The notes under the pieces: model-generated
Told to the model about the DNA's origin: nothing
Databases searched by the model: none
The model's input: the letters and a program-made list of their open reading frames with translations, nothing else
Shown here: positions 9,495-56,099 of the stretch, piece by piece
Position numbering within the stretch: the stretch's first letter is position 1
How the letters are laid out: every line of letters begins with the position of its first letter
Assembly (NCBI RefSeq): GCF_026571515.1
Contig: NW_026858491.1
Span: forward strand, 1 to 64,000
Direction: 5' to 3'
DNA: 64,000 nt
DNA from: Ruditapes philippinarum
Lineage: Eukaryota
Program-made: the position numbers and the translations under genes

Positions 9495-10444
9495 TTGCAC
9501 CATAGGGATATCTGAAGATAGAATACAAAACATAAAATAATTGATCATTTTGCCTACAATCAGAACATGATACTATCGAATTTACTTAAAACAATGTTTA
9601 AACACACTTGTTTAAAAATTCTTTGGTTTGTCGGGCAATTTAAAATCATTCATAAATAATTACAAGTGTAAAATTGAAATGTTTTTCATTGATTAAATAA
9701 AGGTCAGGTAAAACATTGTATCAGTTAGTGATAGTATGAAAATTATCAGTTGAATAGTTAATTGATCTACTTACCGAAACGAAATGCTGCACAAACTATA
9801 TCATTCAATGTGTGTAGCCGTTTATAGCATATCCACCGCAGCCTCCCTTGTGCATTTCAAACTGGTAGAAGTAATTACATGGAAGATATTTCGAAGCTTT
9901 TTTACCCACATCTATCCAACTTCTCATTAATTTAGTATAGCAGCATCGCTTGTAATAACCATTTGGATCGTTGTTGTTAGGATTGACAAAGAAAGCCAAG
10001 TAGCTATTTGGATTTGCATCACAGTTTTTAAAAGTGTAGTCGACGTCGTTGGCTCTGTATCCCTGTTTAGTTTTGCTTTTAGCAATAGATGCTGGTAAGA
10101 ATCCAAGATATATGTAAGGACCCATTGTTGCATGGTTTATTGGTCTGGCATAACCAAAATTTGAGCTGTACTTCACATTAAGTGGTACGGAAAATGTGAA
10201 GAGATCTGCTTCATCACAGTATCATACTGATGACCATTTGAGCGCAAAAGCCTTACTAACACTTTGGAATGAGATCGCCCAAGAAGTCCGAAATCGGCGT
10301 TTGCAGCCTCTTCTTTGGATATAAATGTGTAGCCATAGTTTCGGTGAAATTCGCAATACACTTTTTATTGCTCGCCTCGATTATTTTAGAACGAATATTC
10401 GCCACTTTTCCTTTCATCGAGTTTCCTTTCACAGGAACAGGAAG
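9495..10444 (-). pseudogene. Pseudogene copy A of the uncharacterised secreted-domain family
   Basis: Main exon 10444-9775 is homologous to 55570-54890. It has two TAC>TAA stops, frameshifting deletions (ORF pieces 10173-10361 and 9805-10176) and a deletion near the C-terminus. The terminal exon starting at 9511 has lost its stop (TAA>CAA). No signal-peptide exon was found, and homology to copy D ends at ~10712. Confidence 0.9.
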
Positions 10445-13199
10445 CTTTCAATAGGCAAAATATCACATAAGCTTCTCTTAATTTGAATACATTATAGATC
10501 TAGGCACAATGTATTTAAGACAGTATAAACTGTACAAAGTAGTGATAGATATTTAAAAGTAATAACATACTGTTGACATATTTAACAATAAGTGAAGTCG
10601 ATTTTTAATATGCAGGTTATGTCAATTTCAGTTTATATATATTTTACTTATAGTCTATATAAAACAGTACGCTAAGTAACTGAATAAAGAAATAAAAAAT
10701 AACAAACATGACAAATTTAATCAAAGTGCTGCAGCACTGAATGCGACGGACATGCAACCGGAGAGACACCAAGGCTTCTTTTAGAAAAAACAAAACAAAA
10801 TAAAAACAAAACACAAAATATATAACAGAGAAAATTTGTTCCATACAAGTTCGAGATTTGTAGAGCAATATATTTTGTGTCCCAAATTGATATAATTCAG
10901 ATTTTCTACTTTCAAGCACTTAAATACAGAATGAAATTTATGCCTAAAAACTCTGGTCAAACTTGTAAATCAGTGTCCTTATCGATTTATTCTAAGAAAT
11001 GATATGTAAATAGAAAAAAAACTATCAACGAAATATTTTCTAGAATAAATCCAGGCAAATAAACTTCAAACATAATACATTGTACATTTGAGAATGCTAT
11101 TTAGAATTGCTTCGTGTTTATATCATAGTGGCATACAGACAATAAAATATAAGTCATTTGTATTTTTATTTCTCTTGGATATGTCTCATTAAAAAAAAAT
11201 TGGTTAAAATCATCAGCAATTAATAGTGTATTTCTTAGATTTTTTTATTTACAAGGTAAAATGATGTAGAGGCCAGAGCACATCGTTTTTATTTTAATTT
11301 AAATGTCACTTAAGCACTACAGTGTTTAGTTGTCCTTTTCAACTTCACACTAAATTCCATTTTCAACTTGTTTGCTTCTTACAATTGTATAGCATTTCTA
11401 AAACTATTGCATTACAATCCGCTAGTTGTACTTCCTAATCGCCTGTCCAAAAATCAGAACAGTAAAGCAGAATCTATTTTTAGAATATCGAAGGTTAACT
11501 CATATCATGACCTAGTAAAATATGTAAACAAACCACAAGAATCGGAAGTAGAACTGATATTATAACTTCCTTACCATGATTTCAAGACTACATGGCGGTA
11601 AAGTGTCTTACATGCATTTTTCAAAAAATAGATATTTATACTAGCCATTGAACTGTATCTAATATATTAATAACTGCTGAATATTCAGCTAAACCCGCGT
11701 ATGAGTCACGAAAATAGTTCTTCTTTTATTAATGCGCGAGTTATCCTAGAGTCAAAAAACTTTGATTTGTTAATAATAATGTTTTGTATAATGTAGAAAT
11801 ATTTATTTCCTACTAATAATGTCTTGGAACTCAGAGGTTACACTTTATTGTAGTATAATTTGCTGTCCTACTTTTTCGACAGCGGTAAATCGTTTCAGCA
11901 GTAATTTGCATATTGCGCAATAATACTACGGGACTACAACGTTTTTATCAATAATATACGTTCATATTTTAACTTGGATAACTTAATTTGAAATTGAAAA
12001 GGCTTAATATGGAAGACATTAAGATATCCAGACAAAGTATGGGAGTTTTGAAGGATCAAATTCATGTACTATTTCTTGGGCTGTTAATTGGTTTAGGACA
12101 CATTGCGCGAGTGTAGCCAACGAAATCCCATGTGTAGATGACTTAGCTCTGAACGCGCCTGAGAGCGCGTCCGTCGCAAAAAGCAGGCAACATACCCTTA
12201 GGATGATTATACAGTATTCAAGTAGGAATACTGGAACCACCCAAGTTGAAAAAGGCCAAATAGAAGAAACTAAAAATGGCACATAACACATGTAACATGT
12301 ATTCACAACAATTCAGTCGTGCTGAACGATCTTCAAGGATCGAAAATATAACATCTTTGATTTAATGAACGGAGAGACTTTTTACGGCCGCCACACGGCA
12401 CAAATAACACTGATGTGACCATAAAGTCACGCATCCTTCAAAAGATCCAAGGGAAATAAACCGAAAAAGTAATAAGGCTTATGCTTCAACAAGTCAAAAT
12501 TGTTAATATCAATTTTGGCAAAGATGAAATACTTTGAACAAATATATTTTAAAAAGAAAAGGAAACCGGGTTCTTAAATATTTAATTTTTAAAAAATATA
12601 GGAAGATTTTGTGACAAATTTAATTTATTCGTTAAACAATGTTCATTATCATAAATTCTTTTCCAAAATTCGTTTCTTCACAGACATCGACAGATAAATA
12701 AACATCTATGCCATTTGTCATACCTATAAACAATGGCTGTTAATATTTGCCATTGTTTTGAGCTCTTATTTTATTTGCATTTGCTGTCAACAAAAATGGT
12801 ATTGCTAATATTACATTACTTTTAATAACAGTGTGATATTCTTCTCAATTGGAGTAGATGTCATAGATTCATCATATATATTAGATTAAAAATAAAATGA
12901 CCAAATTCTAGTTTCTTGTTAGAAATCTTTGTAATAGATAATGAATGCACATTATTCTTTTAAAGAAAACGCAACTAATTCTACTTAAGAAAAAGCGAGC
13001 AAGAGTTTTTAACGTTAAAAAATGGTTTTAAAGCATATGAGGTGCCTTTCATCTGCAGAAAGTAGCAGTGAATGTTGCTTGTCATAAAAATAGCGGAATA
13101 TAAACAAAGCAGTGTTTTACTTCTATTTAAAATACAATATAACTGCTCTTATTCAGGTAGGTTGCAAATTAATAAGTTTTGAAAATTAAGACAGGAAAC

Positions 13200-17724: not shown

Positions 17725-18257
17725 CCGCTTGAAATATCTCTCAAATGTTGCGGTTCGGACCAGAATATTCGTGTCGATGGGACCCGCCCATTAGGCTGTA
17801 ACGAGGCTTTAGACTTTTATAATAGTAAACTAATAAAACATTTTTCATGGAGTAATTTTGAAAAGGGACACTGTGGACTTGAAAGAAACACAACAACATC
17901 TTGCCTTTTATTGTTTTATGAGGAAGCATAACAAGACGCTTGAGATATTTGTTTCAGCGCACATGGATATTTAGTGAATATTGCCGGCGAAACTGACAAC
18001 CACGATATATCAATGATGTTGACTGAAATGTTCCCTGGAATTGAAGTTCTGGTGTGGATTGGGTTAAATAAAGTGAGTTCAGAAAAAGTCATATGGCCAT
18101 ATATGACACAATTGAGTTTTAATAAATTCGGTAATGGACAGCCTGATACAGCTAGAAATTGTGTTTTCTGACGGGTTCCAATCTTTACAGCTACTACTGG
18201 GTGACGAGAAGCTGCTCAGAAAAATGGACATATCTTTGTGAAAGGCGAAACAAATGA
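17725..18257 (+). pseudogene. C-type lectin domain gene remnant (QPD motif), frameshifted
   Basis: Exon from 17958 (TTTCAG acceptor) reads HGYLVNI...VWIGLN...W...FNKFGNGQPD..RNCVF, then after a 1-nt shift TGSNLYSYYWVTRSCSEKWTYLCERRNK*. A probable degenerate upstream exon at 17725-17824 reads ..PLGCNEALDFYN. Confidence 0.8.
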
Positions 18258-38125: not shown

Positions 38126-41100
38126 ATGTCGATGTTAATATACACTGGCTTGGTAAGATGTTACTTACATAAATTATTTACAGTGATAATAACAAATTGT
38201 ACCCCCTTCACCTACGCCCCGTCTGCAATATTCTAAATCAACTTTAAAGTAATAGATTATTATCTTGAATGTATGATGTTTAATATTTTAGCCAAATCAT
38301 AGAAAATATTTCTTGCATGCACTATCATCTTAATTAGATTATTTACCAAATATAGAAATATTATGGATTTACTTATAACACTTGGTCTTAATAAAACGAT
38401 ATTTAATTACAAATAGAAGTGTTATTACTTGACCTGTAATAGGGAATATAGCTTTCCGTAAATATATCGTATACTCTTTTATTCAAATAAGACATTTTTG
38501 ATCAAAATTTCATAGATTTCAATCAATTTTTACGATGAAAATATTTAACTCAAAAATGAGTTTAATTAATTTTGAATGACCAATTTTGTTTATTCATGTC
38601 AGGTTTACGTGTTGCTTTCAATCTATATCAAAACAACAGAAGGCGCTTTGAGCTGTGTTGAACATTCTGATGTAAGTGTTTGTTGTTTTTATTTTTCTTT
38701 TATTCTTTCATTGCTTAAGCAAAGAAATATATAAAATTAAAACAAGGCAATGATTATAACATAGATTTCATTGTTTTGGTTAGGCCTAGTTATGATCAAA
38801 CACCGATCATAAGCTTGATAAGGAAAATATGTCTTTGACTTTTTACCATGTGACCTAATTCTTCAACAACCATATTCAAATTTAACCTGTATATCATCCA
38901 GGCAGAGATAAAAGATTCAATATAGGTTGTGATCTTAAGAGTATGAAGAAAGTTTTTCTTTCATTTGACCCGATGATCTAGTTGAACATATTCGCAACTA
39001 ACCATTTTACCAGTCTAAATAACAAAAGCTCCTATAGATAACATTGTGTTCAAAGGAGCTAACTTTAAATCCAAATGCTGCTTTCAATGACTATTCTGGC
39101 TGGAAACATCATCCGCTTAAAATTCACGACAGAAAACTTTTTAAAACATAGCTCTCTTTTTTTTGATAAATATAAGTTTTTGGGCTTGGATCTTCGAGGG
39201 TCAAGGTAGCATTGAAGATGAACACTGTTCGTGATACATATCTAGACAAATATTAAAATAGAGAAAACATAATGCCTTAAATAACGCGCAGAACGACTCT
39301 ATTGACAGTTTTAAGCTTGTTCGTGGACGGTACTGGAAAGTGCAGGTCACTGTCCACGCCCAATAGCACCGGCTTAAGCAGAATTCAACATTTAAAAGCA
39401 AAAGAGATGAAATGTTAGATGTTAAAACATCAGCAGAAGCGCTCATACGGCTGATAACATGGAACCTTCATATTTAATCTAAAACATCCAAAGGATGTTT
39501 TTTATTGTATTGAGTAGAAGTTGTTTTTGTGAGAAGTTTTGTAGCACTCAAAGTGTTTCTGACCAATTGGATAATCAAATGATAAAGTACAGATATAGTT
39601 AAAGTAAATTAATATAATTACACAATTCAACAAAATTGAATCTGTTTAATAACAGTTCAGAATCTTTTTTATTGCAGTGTCCTGTCGGAAGTGCATGCTT
39701 GCTTCCGGGATTTGGAACAGCAAAGCAACCTGCCTCAAAAAAATGTTACCCTTGTAAGTTAAATACGTCGAACGTTTTTCAACAATTAATTAGTAATATT
39801 TAAAAAAGACTGTTATTGTAAATACTAAAGGTTTTACCATTTTACCTCTTTTTTATTTGCATTTAAATTTTGCTATTTATCTTATTTATTTATATATTTT
39901 TTCTAGAAAATCATGGCCATTAGAATACAATCATTTTATACCTATAATTGTCGGCAAACTTCCGTTACTTTACATAAATGATTTATTTCGAAAAGTTTTG
40001 TTCTCAATCTTACTTTGATTTTCGTTCATAACAGCTATTTAGAATTTTAGAAATACTCAAGGGAACCAGTCTTTAAAACTAATTTGATATTGAAATTGAT
40101 TGCATTCAATGTTGTAGTTTCATGACTGCTAATCAATAATCTTATCACAACCAATTTATTAATGGCATCTTTTTAGGTTCGTGTGCTGATTTGAATCAAT
40201 GTTACTTTCAAGGGGGCCTTCATGGCAAGGTGATACAATGTAACTGTTCCGGGTCGGGCTTTACTGGCTGCAACTGTGAAACAAGTAAACGTGCATTTTA
40301 CGTTATGTTTATCAATCAAAGTCGCTGTACTTTATTAATAATTTATTAATATTTTTGTTGGGATTTACGTCACACCGACACAGTATAGGTCATATGATGT
40401 CATTTGAGCTTTACTGTTGCAGGAAGACCTCACGTACCCTTCTATGTATTATTTCAGGCACGACCAAGCAGCTGGGTAGAACCACCGACGTTCCTTAAGC
40501 TCGCTTCATAGTTATATTGATATATGATTGCTTACAACATCTTAGAAGAATGTTACAATTTAATAAAATAAGTGAAGAAGATAATGCTATAATGAAAGGG
40601 AAGAAGTATGATTTTAAGAGAGGTGGAGATCATTCGAAAAAACAACTAGTTCAAGCTTATTATAATGATCGTTAATGATCTTATATTAATAATAATTTTA
40701 TTTTAGGCAACATGTATCCATATTTACCAGAAAAATGTCTGTATAACTTATGGATGAATTACAATCTTTCAAACATTTTTTTGTGTCCATCAACATAAAC
40801 ATATAGAATGCTTATCCTTGAGTAATATAATTTAATCACAAAGAAATTATTGAAATCTATGAAATTCTTATTGAATATATTTACTTTAAATAAACAAATG
40901 AATAATTTATGTATGTGAAGCTGCATTTCCATGTAAAGTTGGTCTTTTCTTTAAAAGAAATATGCCAGTTTTTTATGACACTATATATTCATATTGTGAC
41001 CATAAATAGTATGTCGAATCTTAAAGAGAACATATGTACTTTGCGTGAAGTCGAAACACGTTTATTTATTTTGCATTTACAAAGAGACTGTGTAGCAATT

Positions 41101-42797
41101 ATCAATATTTTCTAATATCAAATTTGAGCAAAATTTATCTTTAATTTAGATATTGATGATTGTGCTAGTTCACCATGTTTGTATAGAGGGACATGCAATG
41201 ACGGGATCAATTACTACAATTGCACATGTTTGCCTGGGTTTAGAGGAGAGAACTGTGAAATAGGTACGTCGTATATCCAAATCTTTCTTTCATTTTGAAC
41301 ATTACAAACAGAAAATGCATTGCAAAGGATTTACAATGCATGCATAAATCATATACATGTATTCAATTTAATGCGTTTGTCATAACTTATCTACGGTTGA
41401 AACCTTACATGAATTGTGTTTTAACTTCAGGGGGGGGGGGGCACCTTTCTATCTGATCTTTATTTTACGTTCTTTAAAATCATTTATCAAAAAAATCGTT
41501 TAACAGAAGTTTTAAAAATGAAATAAAACGCTACTATTCCGTACTCCTTTTTTCATTTTCTAGTGACACGTTCTTTACATTTCTCTGTCAAATTCGTTTG
41601 GATATTTTTCCTGAATGTAACAAGTGGCTTTCTGGTCAATTTAATGAAAACTTGTTTTCATGAATCTTTATAAATGTCATAAAACAAAAACTTGTTGGTC
41701 TACTATTAACCTTGATTTAACCTTTTCAATCTAAACGGTAATTACGAAAGAAAAACAATACAGTTTCAAGTCAGAATTCAATATAAATAAAAAATAACTA
41801 TGTGATCGATTGTCTTTATTATAGCGCTCAGAGGTTGTGATGATTTACAACCCGAGGACAGAGTAAATGGGGAATATGTAATCTACAATAGCCAAGACAA
41901 GCCATACAAAGTGTACTGCGAATTCCACGCAAGTTATGGCTACACGTTTATTTTAAAAAAAAATGCTGGGAAGGCTGATCTGAACCGCCTCCGGTCATAT
42001 TATACTGAAGTGTTAGTAAGACACTTGCGTTCAAATGGACATCAGTATGATACTACAATGGAACAGATCAGTACTTATTCTTCATTGAATATAAGTATCC
42101 AGTACAATGCTAATATTGATTATAAAACTCCAATCAACAGTGCAACATGGGGCTCTTATTTGTATGTTGGCTTCTTACCTATATCTATCGCAGCAAGTAA
42201 ATCTACACAGGGATACCGAGCAAACGGTAACGACTTCACGTTCTCAAATTGTGATAGTAATCCAAATAGCTACTTAGCTCTCTTTGTCAACCATAACAAT
42301 AACGATCCTAATGGAAAATACAAGAAATGCTGCTACAAACCATTGATGAGATTTTGGATCGAAGATGCTGCTAACCAAGCTCCAAATTACATTCCGTGTA
42401 ATTACTTCTACCAGTTTGAGATGCACATGGGAGGATGTGGTGGATATGCAATCAATGGCTACAACACTTTGGATGACATTGTTGGTGCTGCGTTAGGTTT
42501 CCGCTTTGGTATGTAGGTCAATTTTTTAACTGACTATAATGTAATTCATAATTTTTAAATTTAAAAAATCGAGTGTCTGGCAACGTACTGTATTTTCAAT
42601 AATTCAATATTTTAAATTGACAGCAGCCAAACAATGATATAATAAAAAGTGTAACTTAACATTATTGCAAAAGTATTCAAAATATTCAATGTTACCTTAC
42701 TAGTATTTTAGTAATAGAAGTGCAAGTCGCTTATATAGTTTTAATCTATAATTGACACCCATTTTAATTTTTTCTAATCCATTTTTCAGATATCTAG
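38126..42797 (+). CDS. Secreted protein (~361 aa): signal peptide, Cys-rich segment, EGF-like, calcium-binding EGF, then the uncharacterised ~228-aa domain (copy B)
   Basis: Seven GT-AG exons in compatible phases with no stops: 38126-38152, 38603-38671, 39678-39753, 40177-40284, 41150-41263 ([37 protein letters not shown]), 41825-42508 and 42790-42797. Total 1086 nt. The first exon is least certain. Confidence 0.85.
40352..40500 (-). mobile_element. 5'-truncated SINE (3' portion) in an intron
   Basis: On the minus strand it ends TATGACCTATACTGTGTCGGTGTGACGTAAATCCCAACAAAAA, which resembles a mollusc core-SINE tail. Family recognised from memory, not searched. Confidence 0.55.
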
Positions 42798-44279
42798 AAG
42801 GACTTAATTATTGATAATGTAAAGAGAACATATAAGAATGAAGAAAATCTTTCTATTAAGTACATGTTTTCAAATGTTTATATTTACTTATTATGCCCAT
42901 ATAAATGTATGTATGTCCTCCTTTTTGAGGTTTATGCCCTAATTACTGGGACAAATTAGATGTTGTGCAAAGTTGGGAACATTTGTTTCTATAGATATAC
43001 GGTGTCCTATTTCCTTATTATACCATACAGTGTCCTATTTTCTGATTAAACCATCACTTGGCCGTCATCACAAATAACATAATTTTCTGTTTCTAAAACG
43101 TGACTTTGCTAACACGAATTACATAATGTAACAGATTGTGACTAAAATTATGCCCGTACATTTATTATATATCTTACCTTTAGAAGGAAATGCTTATCAT
43201 GCACTCTAAATGATTTAATATACCAAGTTCCAAAACAAACTGTTAAATAAATATGCATTTAGTACTATACATATGCTTTTGCTCACAAAGGTAGCAAAAA
43301 AATACATCTTATTGATAATGCCTTCCGATGCCTTAAATAATGTAATGTAACCACTACGACTATAAATTTCTGCCCTCATTTTTTTTCCTGACACAAAAAC
43401 AAAGGAAACAAATTATAATGCCTAAACAATATCTATGTTAATCCATTTGTTGGCACAATTATCAAAAAACAGTAATTTGGGAAAACTTGTATGTCTATAC
43501 ATTTACTACAGTCACCACTTCGTTGGCACAAATAACATAATGCTCTAAACTGGGAAATACTTGTATGCATTTACATTTTCTATGCCCTTTATTTTGCTGA
43601 TAATTGTAATATTAAAACCAAGATGGGTTTGGAAAAACTTTAATTGAACCCTTATAATGTGCTGTAAATGTGTTGTACACTTACATACATAAACCGTTTA
43701 GACAGAAAATATATATGTTTAAGCAGAAGATCTAGGTTTCCAGAATCCTGAATAATCTGAATAAAACTCTGGAAATTGTTGAAAAATCATCGAAACATTC
43801 AAAAGAGTCGGACAATTTTATCTGATGAAACACTGCCTGAAATCTGAAACTAGCAAATTATCACTTTATAACATTATTTCCTTTGAATGTTTGAGTACAG
43901 CCATTAAGTTTCAACATCTTGTTCTTTTATATTTGTTTGTATATAATCTTATTATATTTTCTTTCTCATATTGATATAAATTCCTGAACTGGTAATTGAT
44001 GCAAGAAATTGAACAAAAATAATGAACAACCATTTAAACTCGATGAATTTCAATTTTGTGTGCAACAAATCGTCGTCTGGTACAAATTAATTGTTTCCTA
44101 TTTCTTGCTTTCATTATTTGTAAAAATGAAAATTGATGTTTTATCAGGTTACCATATGAATTTGTGAATGGTATTTTGTTTGTTTCCTTGTATTGTGGGG
44201 TTATTGTTTAAATTATTGTACTTGTATATTATTTAATTTACTTGAATAAAACATCTTCTTCTCTCCCTTTTCATGTGTT

Positions 44280-44810
44280 GTGTTCGTTTGTTTGCAAAAA
44301 GATATAATTGCGCAGCGTGGACAACCTATCAGTTGCACTTGTGCCATTTAAAATAGTAAGTTCCATTGGAGATGAATCCATTCTGAAAAATAGTGTTATT
44401 TAATGTCTGAAAGACGCAACAGATATACATCCATCATTTGTGCCAAACATCTTTACGATAAAATCGACGAAAAGTTACAATCAATTCTCCCACAATTGCC
44501 GAAATTGACATATCTGGCTTCCAAAACTTTATTAGCCGCTTTTTGACATTGTGTTCTTTCATCTTCTGCGGAACAGTATAAAACGGACACTCTGAATACC
44601 TTAAGTTACATCGGCCGTATCCGGAAAATCTCGGATAAGCACTTGAATATGATTTGTCGGTCGCAAAGCCAATTCACAGGGCTATTTGCCATCCTGTTCC
44701 CGGCACCTGCCGGACAAGTGATGTACTAGCAACGGCTGGACAAAGTTTAACAAGACAACTGTTTGCATTTCTTATTCCGAAAGGCGTTTGATCTGCTGAA
44801 CAAAAACGAG
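44280..44810 (+). mobile_element. Possible highly decayed non-LTR (LINE) reverse transcriptase remnant
   Basis: Fragments translate to VRLFA and FRKAFDL, resembling RT motifs. No intact frame, and the motif order is unusual. Confidence 0.3.
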
Positions 44811-46224
44811 CATACTTAAGTTAATTTATTACATAACCGTGCAATAATATGTTGTAGAATTGAATGTTTGGAATATTTAACATCGCGACATAAAAATTTA
44901 TGTAGCAAAAAAACGAAAAATCATGAAAATGGCGTCTGTCTTCTAATGGAGGTAATGTAACTGGAATAACTTGTTTTGAGGAAGCAACCAGAATACATAG
45001 ATAGAAAATGAAATTGGTCCATACTAGAGCGAGAGTAAGCGTAACTCAACAGAGAATGGTAAGTATAAAGAAATGTTTAAAGCCCTGTGAACTGTAGAGG
45101 GCCTTGCAAGCAATCTTATTTTATAATCGTTCTCCATGACCATTATCTGAAAGTAAACTTGGCAGAGATTTACTACATTGTGCAACAAAACCCTTTTTCA
45201 AAGTTAATCTCTATATAATAGTTAATATACGCTAGGAAATTGTCATTTGCAATGATTTAAAGAATTTAAGAAAAAATGTCTTAAATAACACGGCTATAAA
45301 CATAAAAAATCTTTAGCTCGTTACGTTTAGATTTTTAAAAAAAGTTTAATTAAACTTTCAAACCATTAAGGGACTTCAGGGGCACCGCCAATTTTGTCAT
45401 ATAATTTTGAGCCTTGCAGGTTGGAAGAATTGGGATTATAAATATTTAACTTTCAATGCCTTCTAAATCCACTGTATTTATGATATACTATGGACTAGAG
45501 ACATTTGCATTCACCGGAAATGTTTCCATTACATTTCCAAAGTTTTACATAAAAGAAGGTGAAACGTTTAATTCCAGTTGCGTATACAATACAATTTATC
45601 GGGTTTTTTTCAATCAGTAGTTTCAGAGATTCAGTAATTTCAGCTGACAGTAACGGTATTGCTACTTCTTATGTTTTTGTTAACTTGCTTTTCAATTTGA
45701 ATTAAAACGATAATTGTCAAGTGCTAAACAGGTCAAAAATAGAAAAAGTGCAAGAGAAGATGTATTTTTTATAATTGATAGCTTTTCTTTTAAACTCCTT
45801 TTTGTACAAGATACATATACAGTCAGAGTTATGCGTTTAAAGCGCCTCCAGATAAACGAAGAAAGATAAAAAGCAAAATATTTTATATGAACAGTTTAGG
45901 AAATGCGGAATTGTTCAAACCTTTATATAATGTAAATCATTTATCGACATGTTACATGCAAAATATGTTCTTATTAATTCCCTTAATCAAATATTTACCC
46001 AATAATAAACACAGTTAGGCTATTAATAACGCACGTATCATGTATTAGTAATTATGTTGCTCAGTTTTGCTTTCTAAGTCGATAAACAAAAAAGATTAAA
46101 TAGTTAATGTTTAAGCAAATATTGGAGAAAGTCGAAAACAACTTTCTGAAGAGTTCGAATGAAGTTTGACCACTTGGTATACATGTATATTTCATTCAAT
46201 TTATTCTTGTTAAGTTCTTGCGTG

Positions 46225-48120
46225 TTAAACCATCGGGATTTCTGAAGTAAATAAAAACAAAAAGTTAAAATTGTTTATCGTTTTGTCTAAAATCTGAACA
46301 TCGTACTAGCCAATTTACGTAAACCTCATATTAAACAATAATGTTTGACAAGGAGAACTTGAATTTTATTTGCAATAATGTTATGTAACATTTTTTAAAA
46401 TTATTTTGCTTGTCAGGCAATTTGCAATGATTCGTTTAAAACTATTGAGAAACGTAAAATCGAAAGGGTTTTCATAGATTAAATAAAAAGTCAGTTAAAG
46501 TATCGTATCAGTTAGTCATAGTATATAAAATATCAGTTAAATAGCTTATTGACCCACTTACCGAAGCGAAATCCTAATGCTGCACCAACTATGTCATTCA
46601 AAGTGTTGTAGCCGTTTATAGCGTATCCACCACAGCCGCCCATGTGCATTTCAAACTGGTAGAAGTAATTACGTGGAAGATATTTCGAAGCTCTTTTACC
46701 CACATCGATCCAATTTCTCATTAATTTAGTATAGCAACATCGCTTGTAATTACCATTTGGATCGTTGTTGTTAGGATTGACAAAGAATGCCAAGTAGCTA
46801 TTTGGATTTGCATCACAGTTTGTAAAAATGTAGTCGACATCGTTGGCTCTGTATCCCTGTTTAGTTTTGCTTTTAGCGATGGATATTGGTAAGAATCCAA
46901 GATATATATATGAACCCATTGTTGCATGATTTATTGGTCTGGGATAACCAACGTTTAAGTTGTACTGCACACTTAGTGGTACGGACGAATGCGAAGAGAT
47001 CTGCTTCATTACAGTATCATACTGATGACCATTTGAGCGCAAATGCCTTACTAACACATGTGAATGTGATTGTCCGAGGCGTTTGAAATCTACCTTTGCA
47101 GTGTTTTGTATGGATATAAAAGTGTAGCCATAGTTATGACGAAAATCGCAATACACTTTGTATTGCTCACCTCGTCTATTGTAGAATGAATATTCCCCGC
47201 TTTTCATTTCATTGAGCTTCAAATTCTGACACGGGCTGGAAGCTTTTAATAGAAAAAAATCACATTCATATAACTTTTCATATTTGAATACATTATAGGC
47301 ACTTTTTTATAGGCACTTTGTATTTAAGACAGTCTTAACCGTACTCAGTAATGAAATATATTTATAATACATTTGTAATAGACAGTAATAACATGTTGTC
47401 GATATATTAAGCAAATAATATGTACTTTTGCAAATCGATTCTTAATATGGTGGTTAATTTACATATCTTTTACTTATAGTCTATATAAAACAGTATGTTA
47501 TGTACTAGCACATGAATGAAGTAAGAAAATATCTGAACGTATGAAAGGGGTTGGATTATTGCAAAAATATTTATTACTTTTATTACAAACTAGAGTTGTA
47601 AACTTATTAGCGAGAGATGCCTGTACAATGTACAAAGCATAACTTCTTCAATTAGTTCTTAATTTGCAACATTCAATTTCCTACAAAAATGTCTTTCGAT
47701 GCAGCCTTACTTCTTCGACATACAGCAAGCAATCATTTAAAGAGAAACATTTAGAAATGAAGTATCCTAGATTGTTTCTTATTCACTATTTCCTTAAGGA
47801 AATTATTTATTTTGATTGAAGATGGATGCACGTTTCAGATGTGTTGTAATATAACCACAAAGGCCTATACGCCCGATAGCTTAACTACAGAACATTTAAA
47901 CCCCTCACCATATTTGCATAAATGCACTACAGAGCAAGAATAATTTGACTTTCATTTAAATTTGAATTTTAAATGCTTATAAAAAATAAAAGCGATAAAA
48001 GTGTATATAACAACAATTTATTCAAAATAACAACTGCCTATGCAAGAAATAATTACCTCCGTCTGATACTCCAGAATAGTTGAATAGAAGGACGAGTGAT
48101 GCAATAACTGTTACCTTCAT
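46225..48120 (-). CDS. Secreted uncharacterised-domain protein, copy C (~253 aa)
   Basis: Exons 48120-48057 (signal MKVTVIASLVLLFNYSGVSDG), 47242-46562 (681 nt, phase 1-1) and 46241-46225 (EIPMV*). GT-AG sites and an open frame throughout. Confidence 0.9.
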
Positions 48121-48871
48121 TGTGTATTCTTCCTGTCTGTTTAAGAATATAATCTTATAAAATAATATCAATAAATCATATTGATAGATTCGTACACTCG
48201 GTGGTACGTCATATATAAAAAATACAAGCACGCAAACACAAAACAAAACATACAGCAAGAAAAAACACAACACAACAACAGCAACCAACAAGAACACATT
48301 GTCACATTTATAATAGTTTTTTTATAAATATTTTCAATTATGTAAATGAATCACATTATGCATAAAGTTAAAGCGTATTCATGAAGGAATGTTCCACTTT
48401 CTATATTATTTAACAATCATTTATGCTACCTGTTCAAATATGTTCATTTTGAAATTAAATGTGTTTTATATAATATATAATATTTTGAAAATATTTTACT
48501 CTGCAAAGACATTGTTCTGATCACGTTATATACATTATATTTGTCTACGCTATGAATATCGTGAAAAGATGTGTTATACATGTACTTGATAAAAACAACC
48601 ACTGTATTGTAGTGCAACTATAAATAATAAATGGCTGCACATCATGAAGATAAATCCTGATGAATTTACACAGACTTTTTTTAAACATAAAAAACAACAT
48701 CTTACTATTTAACAGCAGATTAATAATATAAAGTATTATCAATTTTATGTCATTGATAAGATAATGTATATTCGCAAGTATTATATCATTCTTGTTAAAT
48801 AAAAGTAACCGAAAATTTACTAATATTTTCATGGTGCTTTCTAAAAATTATCAAAGGCTTTTAAACATGAC

Positions 48872-48931
<60 letters not shown>

Positions 48932-48958
48932 TAATGATTATTATTATTATTATTATTG
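48872..48958. repeat. (AAT)n microsatellite followed by a short (ATT)n tract
   Basis: Read directly from the sequence. Confidence 0.95.
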
Positions 48959-51892
48959 TTATAAACAAGTTTGACTTTGTTGAATGTGAGTTTTGCTTTG
49001 TAAGCATCAATTAAGTTGAATAATACTTACACACTTGTATTATCCTTATAGAATACAATTTCTCGGTGATTTTCACGCTGCTTAAATAGTTTGGCAAGCT
49101 GTCAAGAACGAACTAATGAAAACATGATGATTTATTTGCAGCGATAATTAGCTCGCCGGAACTGAGAAGAAAATTCTGGATGTGTTATAATTGGCGGGAG
49201 AATTGAGGGTGGGGGAGGTGGTGCTTATTGAATAATATTTTCTTCAAAATCATATCAAATGGTAATTGAGTACCACGTTCATCATATTGAAACAATTTTC
49301 ATTCTAATTTGCTACCTACATCCGGAAGGACCGAATTTATTTCAATATAATTTGTCTTTGAACCTCATATTGAACGTTTAGTTTGTCCACTATGAAGTTT
49401 TCAAAAAAATGGTGACCCTTTTGGAAGAATAAAACAAAACCACAAAGCACAATGTACATTATCCTCTAAAATCATGTATATTTAAGTAAATATTTTTATG
49501 ACATACCGATCCATATTTTCCCAGCTTTATTTATTTACTGTGACCGTTGTAAATCTAGTAATTTATATTTGCATAAGTAAAACTAGGACCTTGTTTGTTA
49601 AATGTTCTCAGGCGAGTGATGCAGGACCAGCATTGCCTACGTTTGTTAGTTATTTTGTTGTTGTTTTAATTTCAAGTTGACAAAAATATTTGAAATTCAA
49701 CAGATGAATCATTTCGTTACATTCTTCATCTTAATTATCCTGTATGTGGTGATAACAAGTTGGTTGTTCTTGTTTTTTTGTTTAATATGTTTTGTAACGC
49801 ACATCGTGAATTTTTGAAAGACGTCGTCAGTTAAAAAAGAACAACAACAAAACAACGATCTACATGTATACTGATTCAAAAATAAAGACGTGTGCACTTG
49901 GCAAGAGTGAAATATTTCATGCTTTCAGGCCAAATACCAGCAACTTCGGTACCGAAATGTGCAAAGAAAGGATTGATATTGGATTGTGTGGTCGTATCAA
50001 TCTGTAAACTGTGTTATACTTTGAAAGCGAAAATTAAAAAGATAATTTCAACAACCCTGATCGATTACTGAAAGGAAATATATTGTAAGATTCTCGCAGT
50101 AGTCCTTTTTTATGTATGTTTTGTAATAATCCTACATGCTATCTGTTGTAGTGATTGCCTTCTCTTCACTGCAGTGTTTTCGTTTTCAGTATTCAACCGT
50201 GGTTTTGCCTTCCCACAATCTTCCCACAATTAATTTTATTTTATCTTCACAGGAATCTCGTGTTTGTCCATGCCTCTGGCTTCAGCAGTGACTTTCATCA
50301 TTTTACAATGATTTTGTTTTCTTTCATTGAAGTGGTCTTGCTAGGTATCTTACACAGCAATGTCAATATTTGTCTCTGCAATGTTCTTGTCCACTTTAAT
50401 CAGCGGTTTTTCCCCGTCTGTGTATTCACAGTTATGAAGTCTTCTGTTTTTATGATTGTGTTTTGTTCCTGTGTTCTCGTGGTCCTTACTGCCTCATGTA
50501 CCACTTGTGAAACATTTCCTTTATCATTTGGAGTATTAAACATTTTAGGAAGATTAAAAGAATCTATCTTTGGCTAGATAGAGGATAGGGAAATCCCAAC
50601 CCGAGGGTGATCGGTTCAATCGGGATCCAGCCTTGGCGAGTTCCCGATGGAACCGATTGCCCGAGGGTTGGGATTTCTCTATCCTCTATCAACCCAATGA
50701 TTGACTATTTTTCTCACTCACCAGGACATATAAATATTAATCAGTTAAACTACTTTCTATGCGAATTACAGTCGGGCGGTGCTTAGGCGCCTGACTTTCT
50801 ATGGTTGACAAAAGCATTTTACTGTCCACAAACAACTCTACTGATCAAGTTTATGTGTCTAATATTAAATAAAAATAAATTCAGGTGAGATTCGGCACCA
50901 AAAAGCAAGGTTATCATGATAAAATACTTCAATATTTAAAGTGGAAAATGTCATAATATTAGTGTTTATAAGGAATTCAGTTCATACTTCAATGATTGAC
51001 AAAAAGCATTTAATCGTTTGCGAAGATTTTTCTACTGATTCAGTTATTTGGCCAAATATTGGATTAAAATACATTAAAATGAGATTTGTCATTAAGAAGC
51101 ATCGTTATCATTAAAGAAAACGTGGATGATTTCCAGGCCAAGTGTCATTATTTATGCGATTTAAGAAGAATTTCGCGAAATATTAAAGTGTGCTATTTTT
51201 AGGAACAGATCGATAAGGAAAACATCGGACCTAGGTCGAGTATGACTCATTGAAGCGTGAAAGTCATTATCATTTTTTTTCGATTCCGTGGACAATTCAA
51301 TAGATAATCTCACATAGTTGATACATGATTTGACCCTCATGACGTTTTTTTTTTTGTTGTCAAAAAAGAGAGGGTGTAGGAAAACGTGGGTGTTTATTAC
51401 AAACAACACAAGAATGGTGTTTCAATAATGAAAGTATTGTTAATCGTAAAATGTTAAAATCAAATATTTCATCTAATGCTAGAGCGAGAGTAAGCATATC
51501 TCAATAGGAAAAGGCAGGTCTTAAGCTTTATGACTTAAAGAGGGCCTTGCAAGCAATTCTAGTTTATAATCGTTCTCCATGGCTATTATCTGAAAGTAAA
51601 CTTGGCAGAGGTTTGTTACATTATTTTTCAAAATTAATCTATATATATATAATAGTTGAAAGTAGAAATGTCATTTGCAATAATTTGAATAATTTTAGAA
51701 AAATGCCTAAGATAACAAGGTGAAGTAACACATGAAATATCTCTAATCTCTTTGTGTTTTAGTTTTTAATAATTTTTTCTGGGCCTTTCGGGCTTGAAGT
51801 GACATTCAAAATATTTAACTTTCAAAACCTATTTAAGCTGTTGTGTTTAAGATATGTAACGGAATAGGGACATTTATATTCACCTGATATAT

Positions 51893-53699
51893 TGTAGTGC
51901 CCCGGTATTTAATGGTAACTGATACTTACCTGGTGATTTTCATCTATTCTGTGACCTTTTGTTATTTTTTTTCTTTTTGTAACAGTAAATAGATTTGCAG
52001 CTTTCACTGGCTTCCCGTATAAATCAAGACAGTTGGACTGTTTAAATATTCAGCTCAACTTGCCTTATCTATGCGTTTTGCCAGGATTTCTTAGTTTTTA
52101 CATCGCACTGTCTCCGTTCAAAATGTAAACAGTTTGTATTTTCACTTTTGCTGCTCCGTTTATCCTAGTCCGTGAAGTTTTTGTGATAAATCCAGTTTAA
52201 ATCGTTAATAACATATGTTTTCTTTTATTGTGTGAAGTAACTTGTTTAAAATCCATGTTAAACCTTCCAAATTTATTGATTTAATTTGTAATTACTGGCA
52301 CATTGTTGTTGTACAGGAGGCGGCCATTTTGTTATGACAACTTCCGGTTGTATTGCTACGGACGCCGGTGCACTAAGGATATTTTTTCCGTATCGTTTAC
52401 ATTGTCTTGATTTGAGAATAGATAGCTATGGCCAGCTTGTTAAACTGTAGAAAACGTCCTTATCATGTAATTATTTTTGTCTTACATTTCTATCTTTATT
52501 TTTAGTGTCTACTCGGTATGTTTATTCAAGATTTTAAGTTTGCATCACTGCTGCAGTAGATGCGCGCTTTTGCTACGTCATTAATGCTGCATTGATGCGT
52601 TCTTGTGTTATGCTACAAGAATGATGCATTTATGCATCATTTTGTTGCATGCTACATCGGTAGCACTCAGTTTTGTATAAATACCAGACGTCTTGCTGCG
52701 TTCTGGGACTTCAGATATTTTTTTCGGCCTGGGCACCCGTTACTCTAGTAGATTCTAGCTATATATTTTAAGAGCATTTTAAAGCATTTATTTTTCTAAA
52801 AGGTTAGTGTGACTTAACAAAATAGCGAATAGACACTAGACAAAAATTATTTATAGTACATTTTTCTTGGCTTAATAAAAGATTTTATATCTTCAAAGTA
52901 ATATTTTTGTAAGAGAAATCTTGTAATGTTTTTGTAGATTTCTCATTGATAAGTAATAATAGTTTTTCTAAATATCTTTAAGTAAACTTGTGCATTTTAA
53001 ATCATTTATTACCTTGCCATATGAGTTTGAGGCTTGTAGGTTCTATATACAGTGAACAGTAAATTATAAGTTATTCAAATACTTGCACAAGGGTTTAGCA
53101 TTTCAGTAAATATAGTGGTTAGCATTAGGTTGGTAGATAATTTAATGAGTTTTAATTAAGTTGTTAAAGCATTTATTTATGAGCATGTTCTGATTGCTTT
53201 AGATTTAACAGAAATTAAATTGATTATACTTTATCACTTGTCTTTTGTCATTGTGTACAAAAATAGATTTTAATTCTTATTTACCCATACTGGTTGAGAC
53301 CTTCCCCCCCCCCTTTTATTGAGTACTGAAGTCCATAGCCCATTTGTTTGCCCTTCACCCTGAAGCCTAAGTCCTGTATCCTGACAATATTGCAAGGGAC
53401 TCGGAGCATTGGGATAACCAGCCTGGTGAACTGAGCAGTATAAGTGGAGCTGATACCAAGGTCGAGCACTCACACACTCAGTCATCCGGACACTACATTG
53501 TCTATAGCATATTGTATTTTGCAATACCAAGGCCATCCGGACGCAAGGACCGCTAGCACGTAGCATATTTTTAATAAGTGGAGCTGGTATCAAGGTCAAG
53601 CACTCACACACTCATTCATCCGGACATTACATTGTCTATAGTATATTGTGCTATACAATACCAAGGCCATCCGGACGCCAGGACCGCTAGCGCGTAACA
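51893..53699. mobile_element. Solo LTR (~1.8 kb), probably Ty3/Gypsy class
   Basis: TGTAG...TAACA termini with a 4-bp TSD ATAT (51889-51892, 53700-53703). Absent from the paralogous site at ~8585. TATAAA at ~52676 and AATAAA at ~52875. Confidence 0.8.
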
Positions 53700-54601
53700 A
53701 TATTTTCGTGACATATCAAAAGTCCAGATAGAAGATGGTGAAAATATTTTATTAAGTAGCGTATACAATACAATTTATCGTTTCATTCAATCAATTGTAT
53801 ATTAACAAGATATACACACATTAGCATACCACACACATTTACATGACATACATTTACATGACATACATTTATATGACATTCACAAGAAACAAACCTTTAT
53901 ATGACAAAAAGCATCAATACAAATAATGAAAATTAAAAAATAAAAGACTAAAACACTCAGAAAAAGAATATTGTATCGGATTACATTTAATTACATCAGA
54001 AGATATTTAAGTGAAAAGAATAGATTCAGCTAGCTTAGCTGACAGTTACAGTAGTGCTAATTCTTTAGTGTTTGTTCATTTGCTTTTCAATTCAATGAAT
54101 AATTGTCATAATTCTAAATAAAAAAGATAAAAAAATAAAAAGGTGAAAAGGGAGTTTTCAACATCTTATTTGTACATAATAAAGTTAAAGAGTGAGAGAC
54201 ATGCGTCAAAGCCGGTCCCGCTAGAAATTTGCAAAATTTAAATATAAAAACATACTTTTATATGAAGATTTTATGTTTTTATTTTGTATATAATGTATAT
54301 CAGTTATCTAAATGTAATATATGCAAAATATGACTTGATAAATTCCAGTTATCAAATATTTACCCAATAACAAACAAAGTTTGACTATTTTTTGTTTTGT
54401 GTAATTATGTTGCTCAGTTATGCTTTAAAAGAGCTAGAATAATTTTTGTTTACATATTTCATGTTATTTCTGTAAAAAAAATCGAAACAAACATGATCAA
54501 ATTACATGGTTAATGTAATAAGAAATAAGTAACTCATAAACTACAAGCAAACTATTTTGAAAGATGTCCATTTCAATAAATGTCTGTTTAGTCCTTGCGT
54601 G

Positions 54602-56099
54602 TTACACCATAGCGATATCTGAAGATAGAATGCAAAACAATATGTAAATGATCAGTTTGCCTAAAATCTGAACATGATACGATCGAATTTACTTAAAACA
54701 ATGAAATAGGACTTGTTTAAAAACAAATTGGTTTGTCAGGGAATTTGAAATTATTCATAAATAATTACAACCGTAAAATCGAAAGAATTTTCATATAGTA
54801 AATAAAAAAAAGTCAGGTAAAATATCGTACCAGTTATTAATAGTAATACTATGTAAAGTATCAGTTAGATAGTTTATTGACCCACTTACCAAAGCGAAAT
54901 CCTAATGCTGCACCAACTATGTCATTCAAGGTGTTGTAGCCGTTGATAGCGTATCCACCACAGCCGCCCATGTGCATCTCAAACTGGTAGAAGTAATTAC
55001 ATGGAAGATATTTCGAAGCTTTTTTACCCACATCGATCCAATCACTCATTAGTTTAGTATAGCAACATCGCTTGTAATAACCATTTGGATCGTTGTTGTT
55101 AGGATTGACAAAGAAAGCCAAGTAGCTATTTGGATTTGAATCACAGTTTGTGAAAGTGTAGTCGACATCGTTGGCTCTGTATCCCTGTTTAGTTTTGCTT
55201 CTAGCAATAGATGCTGGTAAGAATCCAAGATATATGTAAGGACCCATTGTTGCATGATTTAAGGGTCTGGCATAACCAACATTTGAATTGTACTGCACAT
55301 TAAGTGGTACAGAAGAATGTGAAGAGATCTGCTTCATTACAGTATCATACTGGTGACCATTTGCGCGCAGATGCCTTACTAACACTTGGGAATGAGATTG
55401 TCCAAGACGTCCGAAATCGGCCTTTGCAGCGTCTTCTTTGGATATAAATGTGTAGCCATAGTTTCCGTGAAATTCGCAAAACACTTTGTATTGCTCGCCA
55501 CGGCTATTGTAGAACGAATATTCCCCACTTTTCCTTTCATCAAGTTTCAAATCCTCACATGAACAGGAAGCTTTTAATAGACAAAATATCATCATTTTGA
55601 TAGCTTCTCTTAATTTGAATTAGGCACAATGCATTTAAGACTGTCTAAACTGTACATAGTAGTGTAAGATATATATAAAAAAGTAATAACATATTGTTGA
55701 CATATTTAGCGATAAGTGAAAGTCGATTTTTAATATGGAGGTTATGTCAATTTCAGTTTATATATATTTTACTTATAGTCTATATCTTTATAAAACAGAA
55801 CGTTATGTAAATGAATAAAGAAATAAAAAATAACAACTTAACATGACGGGGTATGGATTTCATACTGTAAAACATGTATTGCTACTTTAATGACTAGATA
55901 ACAATCCTTAAAGCAAGTCCAAAACGGCAAAATTGAAAATGTTGCAGGCTCGGGTTAGCCTTAATGTTCCTTTTTATTTATTTTATAGCAATGCATCAAA
56001 ATAAATATCAATTGCCTAAAAATAAATGAAGAAATTACCTTCGTCTGAGACAGAATAGCCGAATAGAAGGACGAGTGTTGCACAAACTGTCACTTTCAT
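54602..56099 (-). CDS. Secreted uncharacterised-domain protein, copy D (~252 aa)
   Basis: Exons 56099-56039 (signal MKVTVCATLVLLFGYSVSDE), 55570-54890 (681 nt, phase 1-1) and 54618-54602 (DIAMV*). GT-AG sites and an open frame throughout. Confidence 0.9.

What the first reader, a model, noticed from the sequence alone, without database searches (positions are those of the whole stretch)
38126..56099. Expanding family of secreted proteins with an unassigned ~227-aa domain
Seen: three intact genes (B, C, D) and one pseudogene (A, ~9.5-10.4 kb) share the motifs HLR.NGHQYDT, GFLP, QGYRAN, NCD.NPNSYLA.FVN.NNNDPNG.YK.CCY and [33 protein letters not shown]. All intact copies have signal peptides. 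I cannot match the domain core to a named Pfam family from memory. Inference: a lineage-expanded secreted effector or lectin family undergoing birth-and-death evolution beside other lectin-type genes.
Basis: partly seen in the sequence, partly recalled or inferred. Interest (0 to 1): 0.82.

Follow-up and report, generated by a model that had tools for sequence, protein, structure and literature searches.

The report
Unnamed secreted domain family in a clam
A Manila-clam gene cluster encodes secreted proteins built on an unnamed ~227-residue domain, which has a fibrinogen-like N-terminal cap and a body matching no solved structure, and which also occurs in corals, brachiopods, snails and some myxobacteria.

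Summary
Genes B, C and D are intact and canonically spliced, and A is a frameshifted pseudogene lacking a detectable exon 1. Each carries the domain on one symmetric phase 1-1 exon (681 or 684 nt).

The window matches Ruditapes philippinarum. B corresponds to LOC132753327 (99% identity over the domain exon).

The genome holds at least 20 full-length copies. Two more lie on the same contig just past the window. Copies are under purifying selection (dN/dS 0.2-0.3), and RNA-seq covers exon 2 but not the intron.

The family is not clam-specific. Full-length homologues occur in other bivalves, Haliotis, Lingula and Montipora. They also form the C-terminal domain of large proteins in high-GC Myxococcota-type MAGs with bacterial neighbours.

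The universal signature is QG, F-x-N-C-D-x-N-P-N-S-Y, W and H-x-G-G-C-G. An extracellular binding (lectin-like) role is inferred, not shown.

The parts
56039..56099 (-). Gene D exon 1: start codon and signal-peptide-like N-terminus (20 codons plus 1 nt, ends in phase 1)
   Evidence: Sequence read. GT donor at 56038-56037 and hydrophobic window of 2.69. Exon-1 pattern match.
54890..55570 (-). Gene D exon 2: the whole 227-codon domain on one symmetric phase 1-1 exon
   Evidence: ORF, splice sites. RNA-seq depth is confined to this exon, and loose ends at both borders run into exon-1-like and exon-3-like letters. AF2 model pLDDT 92.7.
54602..54618 (-). Gene D exon 3, coding part: the last five residues and the stop, followed by 3' UTR
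   Evidence: AG acceptor at 54620-54619. Contig and read depth at 54534-54667.
48057..48120 (-). Gene C exon 1: signal-peptide-like N-terminus
46562..47242 (-). Gene C exon 2: 681-nt domain exon, phase 1-1
   Evidence: 90% nucleotide identity to D. dN/dS 0.23 against D.
46225..46241 (-). Gene C exon 3, coding part
38576..38680 (+). Gene B exon 1: signal-peptide-like N-terminus. Borders are approximate, taken from tblastn.
   Evidence: tblastn of P0003 (LOC132753327). ORF. Hydrophobicity.
39675..41265 (+). Gene B exons 2-4: Cys-rich and EGF-like modules at about 39675-39755, 40179-40286 and 41149-41265. Borders are approximate.
   Evidence: tblastn of P0003, 95-97% identity. Weak Pfam EGF/hEGF match at P0003 residues 98-128, below the cut-offs. 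P0004, the closest NCBI paralog, carries precomputed EGF and hEGF domains.
41825..42508 (+). Gene B exon 5: 684-nt domain exon, phase 1-1
   Evidence: (99% identity to P0003).
42790..42797 (+). Gene B exon 6, coding part: two residues and the stop
   Evidence: It reproduces the C-terminus of P0003.
9454..10712 (-). Pseudogene A: a copy of the D-type gene from the intron to the 3' region. Domain remnants lie at about 9786-10466, with two 1-nt deletions and no detectable exon 1.

Best explanation
B, C and D are functional genes for secreted proteins built on an unnamed extracellular domain of about 227 residues, encoded by a single symmetric phase 1-1 exon.

The domain has two parts:
- A 45-50-residue N-terminal cap, held by a disulfide. 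It is homologous to the A subdomain that opens fibrinogen-related (FReD), intelectin, collagen C-propeptide (COLFI) and GON domains.
- A body of about 180 residues with its own signature: QG, F-x-N-C-D-x-N-P-N-S-Y, W and H-x-G-G-C-G. The body has no detectable relative among solved structures or curated profiles.

The exon behaves as a shuffling module:
- In the clam it is used alone behind a signal peptide (C, D and two further copies) or behind EGF-like modules (B-type).
- In other animals it is joined to Sushi, TSP1 or EGF.
- In Myxococcota-type bacteria it ends large secreted-looking proteins that carry MopE-type Cys repeats, EGF or beta-helix repeats.

What is shown: gene structures, transcription and splicing of the subfamily, purifying selection, recent tandem expansion with one dead copy, homology of the cap, lack of any match for the body, and the phyletic spread.

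What is inferred: the Asn/Asp/His-rich loops, almost identical from clam to bacterium and probably tied together by the C143-C204 pair, form a ligand site, most likely for a glycan and possibly metal-dependent. On this reading the expanded clam copies serve as soluble recognition proteins alongside the very large canonical FReD repertoire.
For: Gene models, splice sites and phases.

Expression:
- Two bona fide RNA-seq libraries cover exon 2 of D at about 1-11x per strand, read from only 4-12% of each run.
- The 3' flank has no depth, and intron depth is low outside a repeat.
- Loose ends at both exon borders continue into exon-1-like and exon-3-like sequence.

Selection: dN/dS is 0.11-0.41 over all paralog pairs.

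Expansion:
- At least 20 full-length copies in the genome.
- The C, D, 73.9k and 76.6k copies form a species-specific tandem clade (99/98), and the B-type clade is supported at 100/100.

Cap homology:
- Profile against PDB sequences hits XEEL at 7e-5, plus ANGPTL3 and fibrinogen gamma, over query positions 23-84 only.
- hhalign of 138 family sequences against 20 canonical FReDs of the same genome gives probability 95%, E 3.3e-8, over 47 columns.
- 20, 13 and 4 of 68 members hit Pfam Fibrinogen_C, COLFI and GON. Where the matched region was inspected, it was nearly always only the first ~45-80 profile positions.
- NCBIfam NF040941 is passed by the coral, Lingula and bacterial members.

Body:
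- AF2 pLDDT 94.5.
- Best Foldseek E 0.31.
- Body against FReD body by hhalign: probability 0.4%.

Spread.

Bacterial authenticity:
- GC 0.60-0.69 and ORFs of 560-1184 aa.
- PF11617 repeats in the same proteins.
- Histidine-kinase and RimK-operon neighbours.

Universal signature.
Against: - No binding, localisation or phenotype data exist for any member. Four literature searches found nothing.
- The 'novel body' claim rests on a predicted model and on the PDB only. No AlphaFold DB or ECOD search was possible.
- RNA reads laid on D carry letters typical of paralogs C, E and F, so expression of D itself, as opposed to the subfamily, is not resolved.
- Signal peptides were judged by hydrophobicity only.
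Confidence: 0.6

Rival explanations
1. The whole 227-residue unit is simply a very diverged fibrinogen-related domain (A+B+P). The P (ligand) subdomain has been rebuilt, as in intelectins, so it is a far-flung FReD lectin rather than a cap joined to a new body.
For: - The top 50 rows of the second-look alignment are all FReD or intelectin chains, colinear over model residues 1-229 with 125-154 residues aligned. The top 6 of the wide search are all FReD, intelectin or COLFI.
- A relaxed hhalign lines up NCD with the FReD NCA cysteine, and F-E-M-H-M with the last FReD strand.
- Pfam Fibrinogen_C aligns to P0003 over profile positions 4-181, below threshold.
- Language-model features of the body alone still lie nearest to COLFI, GON and Fibrinogen_C clusters, at 0.88-0.90.
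Against: - Z never exceeds 4.5, with rmsd 4.2-5.8 A.
- With the deeper alignment, hhalign stops at column 48.
- The shared-feature counts (110-135) lie in the range the tool gives for chance or very distant relatives.
Confidence: 0.35
2. The proteins are structural or adhesive extracellular-matrix components, for example mantle or shell matrix or cell-cell cohesion. In this reading the domain acts as an assembly or oligomerisation module, like the collagen C-propeptide, not as an immune lectin.
For: - The cap is shared with COLFI, a trimerisation module.
- The domain is fused to matrix-type modules: EGF, Sushi and TSP1.
- One bacterial protein's TSP3 part resembles the cell-cell cohesion protein MtsC.
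Against: - The single-domain secreted forms C and D have no matrix-anchoring module.
- The homodimer prediction gave no verdict, which is neither support nor refutation.
- Rapid tandem turnover with pseudogenes is more typical of recognition families.
Confidence: 0.2
3. The domain is an enzyme, for example a hydrolase or a metal-dependent activity, using the invariant His, Asp and Asn residues of the NCD and H-x-GGCG motifs.
For: His200, Asn142, Asn148, Ser149 and Gln74 are nearly invariant from bacteria to clams. Conservation this strict is also seen in active sites.
Against: - No similarity to any enzyme family in Pfam, NCBIfam or PDB.
- Glu198 is not conserved in bacteria.
- The conserved cysteines are more likely disulfide-bonded in a secreted protein.
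- The position as the terminal domain of adhesin-like bacterial proteins suits a binding module.
Confidence: 0.08
4. The copies are not real genes. They would be chance ORFs, transposon-borne sequence or assembly duplicates.
For: Retroelement fragments lie in the window. The assembly has 15,874 contigs and may hold haplotigs.
Against: - Canonical splicing and exon-limited RNA coverage.
- dN/dS of 0.2-0.3 with dS of 0.12-0.33 between tandem copies.
- NCBI gene models in the same species.
- Conservation across phyla.
Confidence: 0.01

Closest known systems
Fibrinogen-related domain (FReD; Pfam PF00147), e.g. ficolins, angiopoietins, tachylectin 5A
   Same: - An N-terminal A subdomain of about 47 residues with the Cys ... 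S-G-x-Y ... V-x-C pattern (hhalign 95%).
- Secreted, and similar in size (about 220 aa).
- Massively expanded in the same clam genome, with a canonical FReD gene about 10 kb away.
   Different: - The body shows no sequence similarity (probability 0.4%) and no stand-alone structural similarity.
- The window proteins get no PF00147 hit.
- The FReD signature after the cap (GGGW, F-W-L-G-N, the Ca loop and the W-W-x-x-C motif) is absent. A different signature takes its place.
Intelectins / X-type lectins (human ITLN1 4wmq, Xenopus XEEL 4wmo, lamprey serum lectin 7e1e)
   Same: - The same logic: a fibrinogen-like start followed by a rebuilt body that carries the ligand site.
   Different: - The hits cover only the cap.
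- Body motifs differ and the domain is shorter (227 against about 280 aa).
- The intelectin Ca2+/diol site could not be mapped.
Fibrillar collagen C-propeptide (COLFI, PF01410) and GON domain (PF08685)
   Same: - Both share the same N-terminal cap. 13 and 4 of 68 members give weak hits.
- Nearest language-model clusters carry COLFI or GON.
   Different: - The hits stop at profile positions of about 45-86.
- None is above threshold for the window genes.
- A full GON profile comparison was not made, because the clam GON domains are split over several exons and the joined step was left out.
NCBIfam NF040941 GGGWT_bact, 'fibrinogen-like YCDxxxxGGGW domain'
   Same: This 46-position model is passed by the bacterial, coral and Lingula members of the family (46.8-53.2 bits, cut-off 30). 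The cap is therefore an already catalogued module, and it is known in bacteria.
   Different: - It covers only the cap. The 180-residue body has no model.
- The window's D protein does not hit it, because bivalves replaced GGGW with Y-G-Y-T.

Membership tests
FReD (Pfam PF00147 Fibrinogen_C) | Match to the family profile above the gathering score over most of its 221 positions | tested here: not met
   - No hit for B, C or D at E up to 10.
- P0003 (gene B's product) scores 18.1 bits, below the 22-bit cut-off.
- Relatives that pass do so with profile positions of about 3-56 only.
FReD (Pfam PF00147 Fibrinogen_C) | A subdomain: disulfide-stapled N-terminal unit with the Cys ... SGxY ... VxC pattern | tested here: met
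   - hhalign against 20 canonical FReDs of the same genome: probability 95.1%, E 3.3e-8, columns 2-48.
- PDB profile hits fall at positions 23-84.
- C5 and C32 are conserved.
FReD (Pfam PF00147 Fibrinogen_C) | B and P subdomain fold | tested here: inconclusive
   [not shown]
FReD (Pfam PF00147 Fibrinogen_C) | P-subdomain ligand/Ca2+ site motifs and second conserved disulfide | tested here: inconclusive
   - Only a low-confidence relaxed alignment pairs the NCD cysteine with the NCA cysteine.
- The body-only profile comparison is not significant (E 0.16).
Intelectin / X-type lectin | Full-length similarity to intelectin, including the intelectin-specific body | tested here: not met
   - Sequence-profile hits to XEEL, ITLN1 and lamprey lectin cover query positions 21-72 only.
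COLFI (PF01410) | Profile match beyond the N-terminal cap, above the 26.2-bit cut-off | tested here: not met
   - No hit for the window genes.
- Relatives match profile positions of about 19-116 only.
GON (PF08685) | Profile match above 22.6 bits | tested here: not met
   - 4 of 68 members hit it, with best E 0.0056 (17 bits) over positions 2-45.
- A profile-profile test was not made.
NCBIfam NF040941 GGGWT_bact | 46-position YCDxxxxGGGW cap above 30 bits | tested here: not met
   Window protein D gives no hit. The coral, Lingula and bacterial relatives score 46.8-53.2 bits. The family's cap therefore belongs to this module, but the bivalve version has diverged out of the model.
The unnamed family itself (cap plus body) | Full-length match including QG, FxNCDxNPNSY, W and HxGGCG | tested here: met
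   B, C, D and the remnants of A. The signature is conserved from bacteria to clams.

The most novel reading that the evidence does not exclude
The ~180-residue body is a new protein fold and a new class of extracellular glycan- or ligand-binding module. It would have been exchanged horizontally between early marine animals and Myxococcota, and later recruited and expanded in bivalves as an innate-immune recognition family parallel to FReDs and C1q.
Probability: 0.3. Interest if true: 0.78.

Novelty: new variant of a known kind. Interest (0 to 1): 0.62.

Why it matters
**An unmodelled family.** Bivalves rely on huge, fast-evolving families of secreted recognition proteins. This one has escaped annotation: every named member is 'uncharacterized', and no Pfam or NCBIfam model covers it. 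Yet it comprises 487 clusters at 50% identity and occurs in several phyla.

**Practical use.** Defining the family gives a new profile for annotating marine invertebrate and myxobacterial proteomes.

**A structural target.** The body is confidently predicted but matches no solved structure.

**An evolutionary question.** Near-identical motifs are shared between animals and Myxococcota, which bears on how the fibrinogen-like superfamily arose and spread.

**An aquaculture candidate.** If it binds microbes, it becomes a candidate immune marker in a major farmed clam.

Tried and rejected
- **Single-sequence searches.** Pfam scan of B, C and D found nothing relevant. phmmer against PDB found nothing.
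- **Foldseek on the whole model.** No match at E of 0.001 or below.
- **Weak beta-trefoil hits for the body.** Foldseek listed RyR N-terminal domains, IL-1 family members and Kunitz inhibitors at probability 0.12 or less and TM 0.2-0.28. The full VIA search did not support them, so they were rejected as noise.
- **hhalign -glob.** It gave a meaningless alignment and was replaced by relaxed local alignment.
- **Homodimer prediction.** The verdict was 'no answer' (score 0.02). It counts neither for nor against oligomerisation.
- **Literature.** Four searches by topic, gene identifier and motif found nothing on this family.
- **Taxa of unnamed clusters.** The organisms behind many ENA, JGI and Logan members stay unknown.
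- **Spliced model.** The 252-aa model was never joined.
- **GON comparison.** A profile-profile test was left out because the clam's GON domains are split over exons.
- **ApeC/apextrin and C-type lectin.** Both were considered from memory and rejected, because Pfam gives no such hit.
- **Low-GC 'Dehalococcoidia' MAG hits.** L063, L064 and L066 were not counted as bacterial evidence. They have GC 0.43, sit in a 10.4-Mb bin, have short exon-like ORFs and group with eukaryote-type sequences.


Full report
**1. What is in the window**

The window is AT-rich (GC about 0.31) and intron-bearing. Gene B's domain exon is 99% identical to NCBI protein P0003 (LOC132753327, Ruditapes philippinarum). Other copies in the genome match P0004 and P0005 of that species. 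The source is therefore a Manila clam assembly (1.41 Gb, 15,874 contigs).

| Gene | Strand | Exons | Product |
|---|---|---|---|
| D | - | 56099-56039, 55570-54890, 54618-54602 | 252 aa |
| C | - | 48120-48057, 47242-46562, 46241-46225 | 253 aa |
| B | + | six exons, about 38576-42797; domain exon 41825-42508 | compared with NCBI model P0003 (361 aa) |

- All checked introns are GT..AG.
- The domain exons are 681, 681 and 684 nt, and each starts and ends in phase 1.
- The ORFs read through the donor after G-F-R-F. The true C-termini come from a short last exon, which reproduces the C-terminus of P0003.
- Pseudogene A (about 9454-10712, -) is a 90%-identical copy of the D-type gene from its intron onward. 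It has two single-base deletions, and no exon 1 was detectable.
Every search used the domain exon by reference.

**2. The genes are real and in use**

*Transcription.* Two true RNA-seq libraries, read at only 4-12% of each run, cover exon 2 of D.
- The 3' flank has no depth. The intron has almost none, apart from a short dispersed repeat at about 55919-55953.
- At both exon borders the reads and contigs leave the genomic sequence. They continue into exon-1-like and exon-3-like letters, which means they are spliced.
- Many reads carry bases typical of paralogs C, E and F. The safe statement is that the C/D/E/F subfamily is transcribed. Assignment to D itself is not resolved.

*Selection.* Pairwise dN/dS is 0.2-0.3 among the tandem copies, with dS of 0.12-0.33. 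That is too high for alleles and indicates purifying selection.

*Copy number.* The genome holds at least 20 full-length domain exons. Two more lie on the same contig just beyond the window, at C6978:73945-74652 and 76605-77327.

*Phylogeny.* In a maximum-likelihood tree:
- the short secreted copies C, D, 73.9k and 76.6k form one species-specific clade (99/98);
- the EGF-bearing B-type copies form another (100/100);
- Mercenaria proteins, with two further copies from this genome, form the sister clade.

Together with pseudogene A, this is birth-and-death evolution by local duplication.

**3. What the domain is**

*No curated model covers it.* Pfam gives no hit for B, C or D, and NCBIfam gives none for D.

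*The cap is fibrinogen-like.*
- A profile of 42 members searched against PDB sequences hits only fibrinogen-type proteins, and only over its first ~60 positions. XEEL scores 7.4e-5 and lamprey serum lectin 2.5e-4, followed by ANGPTL3, intelectin-1 and fibrinogen gamma.
- A profile-profile comparison with 20 canonical FReDs from the same genome gave 58% probability over 120 columns with the small alignment.
- With a 138-sequence alignment it gave 95% probability and E 3.3e-8, but over only 47 columns, which is the A subdomain.
- Twenty of 68 members hit Pfam Fibrinogen_C, 13 hit COLFI and 4 hit GON. Where I looked at the matched region, it was nearly always only the first ~45-80 profile positions.
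- The coral, Lingula and bacterial members pass NCBIfam NF040941, the 46-position 'fibrinogen-like YCDxxxxGGGW domain'. Bivalves have replaced GGGW with Y-G-Y-T and fall out of that model.

*The body has no detectable relative.*
- AlphaFold2 gives confident models: pLDDT 92.7 for the whole domain and 94.5 for residues 55-232 alone.
- Body profile against FReD body profile gives probability 0.4%.

*Hints that the body is still a diverged FReD body.*
- Language-model features of the body lie nearest to clusters carrying COLFI, GON or Fibrinogen_C, at scores the tool rates as a lead only.
- A relaxed alignment places the conserved cysteines colinearly with those of FReD.
- Pfam Fibrinogen_C aligns weakly to P0003 over positions 4-181 (18.1 bits).

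*Reading.* The cap is homologous to the FReD-superfamily A subdomain. The body is either an FReD B/P body diverged beyond recognition or a different fold. I put the former at about 0.35.

**4. Distribution**

- The family has 487 clusters at 50% identity with E of 1e-3 or better, and 137 with E of 1e-30 or better.
- Named members come from many bivalve orders and from Tegillarca, Mya, Mactra, Haliotis and Lingula. They also come from the corals Montipora foliosa and M. capricornis.
- The alignments are full-length: 39% identity for Lingula and 32% for Montipora.
- Partner domains include EGF, Sushi and TSP1. One Mytilus member carries the database name 'CUB domain-containing protein'.

*Bacterial homologues.* A scan of 185,579 bacterial and archaeal species found 15 loci.
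- Twelve lie in high-GC MAGs labelled mostly as Myxococcota, Myxococcales or Deltaproteobacteria (GC 0.60-0.69 over the match).
- There the domain is the C-terminal end of ORFs of 560-1184 aa. These also carry PF11617 MopE-type repeats, EGF, Big_9, or hexapeptide beta-helix plus TSP3 repeats.
- Neighbours of L067 are a histidine kinase and a RimK operon, so these are genuine bacterial genes.
- Only 8 of 301 sampled species of that phylum have the domain.

*Suspect hits.* Three loci in a 'Dehalococcoidia' MAG have GC 0.43, sit in a 10.4-Mb bin, have short exon-like ORFs and group with eukaryote-type sequences. I treat them as probable eukaryotic contamination.

*Tree of animals and bacteria.* The bacteria form one clade (100/99). 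Molluscs form a second group (96/89). Cnidarian, brachiopod and unnamed sequences form a third (97/82). The tree is unrooted, so the direction of transfer is open. Rarity in bacteria, the eukaryote-like partner domains and the mainly animal superfamily of the cap favour transfer from animals to bacteria. This is an inference.

**5. Likely mechanism**

Residues conserved from Myxococcota to clams are G16, C32, G39, Q74, P119, G130, F140, N142, C143, N148, S149, Y150, W178, H200 and G202-G203-C204-G205. The T-F-T-N-C-D-A-N-P-N-S-Y stretch is almost letter-identical across the two domains of life.
- C143 and C204 are the only universally conserved cysteines outside the cap. They probably form a disulfide joining the two motifs into one Asn/Asp/His-rich surface.
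- The C-C pair is confined to part of the bivalve clade. It can therefore only pair with itself or stay free.

Four observations point to a ligand-binding site, most plausibly for a glycan and possibly metal-assisted: this residue chemistry, the terminal position in adhesin-like bacterial proteins, the secreted single-domain clam forms, and the turnover beside FReD, TSP1 and lectin-like exons. This is inference, and nothing was measured.

Matrix/assembly and enzymatic roles remain possible. A homodimer prediction gave no verdict.

**6. Novelty**

The cap is known. The family as a whole, its body, its signature and its animal-plus-myxobacterial range are not described in any library or paper I could search.

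I class it as a new variant of a known kind: a new branch of the fibrinogen-like superfamily. There is about a 0.3 chance that the body is a new fold and a new binding-module class.

Noticed in passing
window 28270-28470, 28892-29086 and 31459-31677 (+); 25719-25946 and 25974-26261 (+); 17974-18171 (+): A canonical, multi-exon fibrinogen-related domain and two TSP1 repeats lie about 10-15 kb upstream of gene B. A C-type-lectin-like exon (W-I-G-L and Q-P-D by eye, no Pfam hit) lies further upstream. They may belong to one or more multidomain lectin genes.
   Followed up: partly
G000:C6978:73945-74652 (+) and 76605-77327 (+), just beyond the window (L004, L008): Two more intact D-type domain exons sit on the same contig. 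The tandem cluster therefore has at least five intact copies plus the pseudogene.
   Followed up: partly
window 55919-55953 (intron 1 of gene D): A short repeat is covered about 50-fold more deeply than the exons in RNA-seq. Loose ends on both sides show a dispersed element transcribed elsewhere, not part of gene D.
   Followed up: no
window 3814-7057 (-) and 61784-63220 (+): Retroelement remains. One is a gag-like DUF1759 ORF with adjacent ORFs. The other is a Gypsy-type integrase (rve, zinc-binding H2C2, weak chromodomain).
   Followed up: partly
window 1664-2175 and 50155-50692: Two copies of the same repeat, with near-identical ORF translations on both strands. One copy lies between genes C and D.
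   Followed up: no
L063, L064, L066 (MAG CAXXBX01, labelled Dehalococcoidia): A 10.4-Mb bin has GC-0.43 contigs carrying three eukaryote-type copies of the domain, one of them split between frames. This is probably eukaryotic DNA binned into a bacterial MAG.
   Followed up: partly
whole genome G000: Canonical FReD exons are hugely expanded. The search reported 151 matches above the Pfam cut-off from only 150 scored candidates, out of 746 candidates in all. Many of them are single-exon.
   Followed up: no
P0117 (JGI, 4035 aa, 275-kb contig): A giant protein with about 15-17 tandem FReD/COLFI-like caps and a Laminin_G_3 domain. Each cap matches the family profile weakly. Its organism is unknown.
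   Followed up: partly
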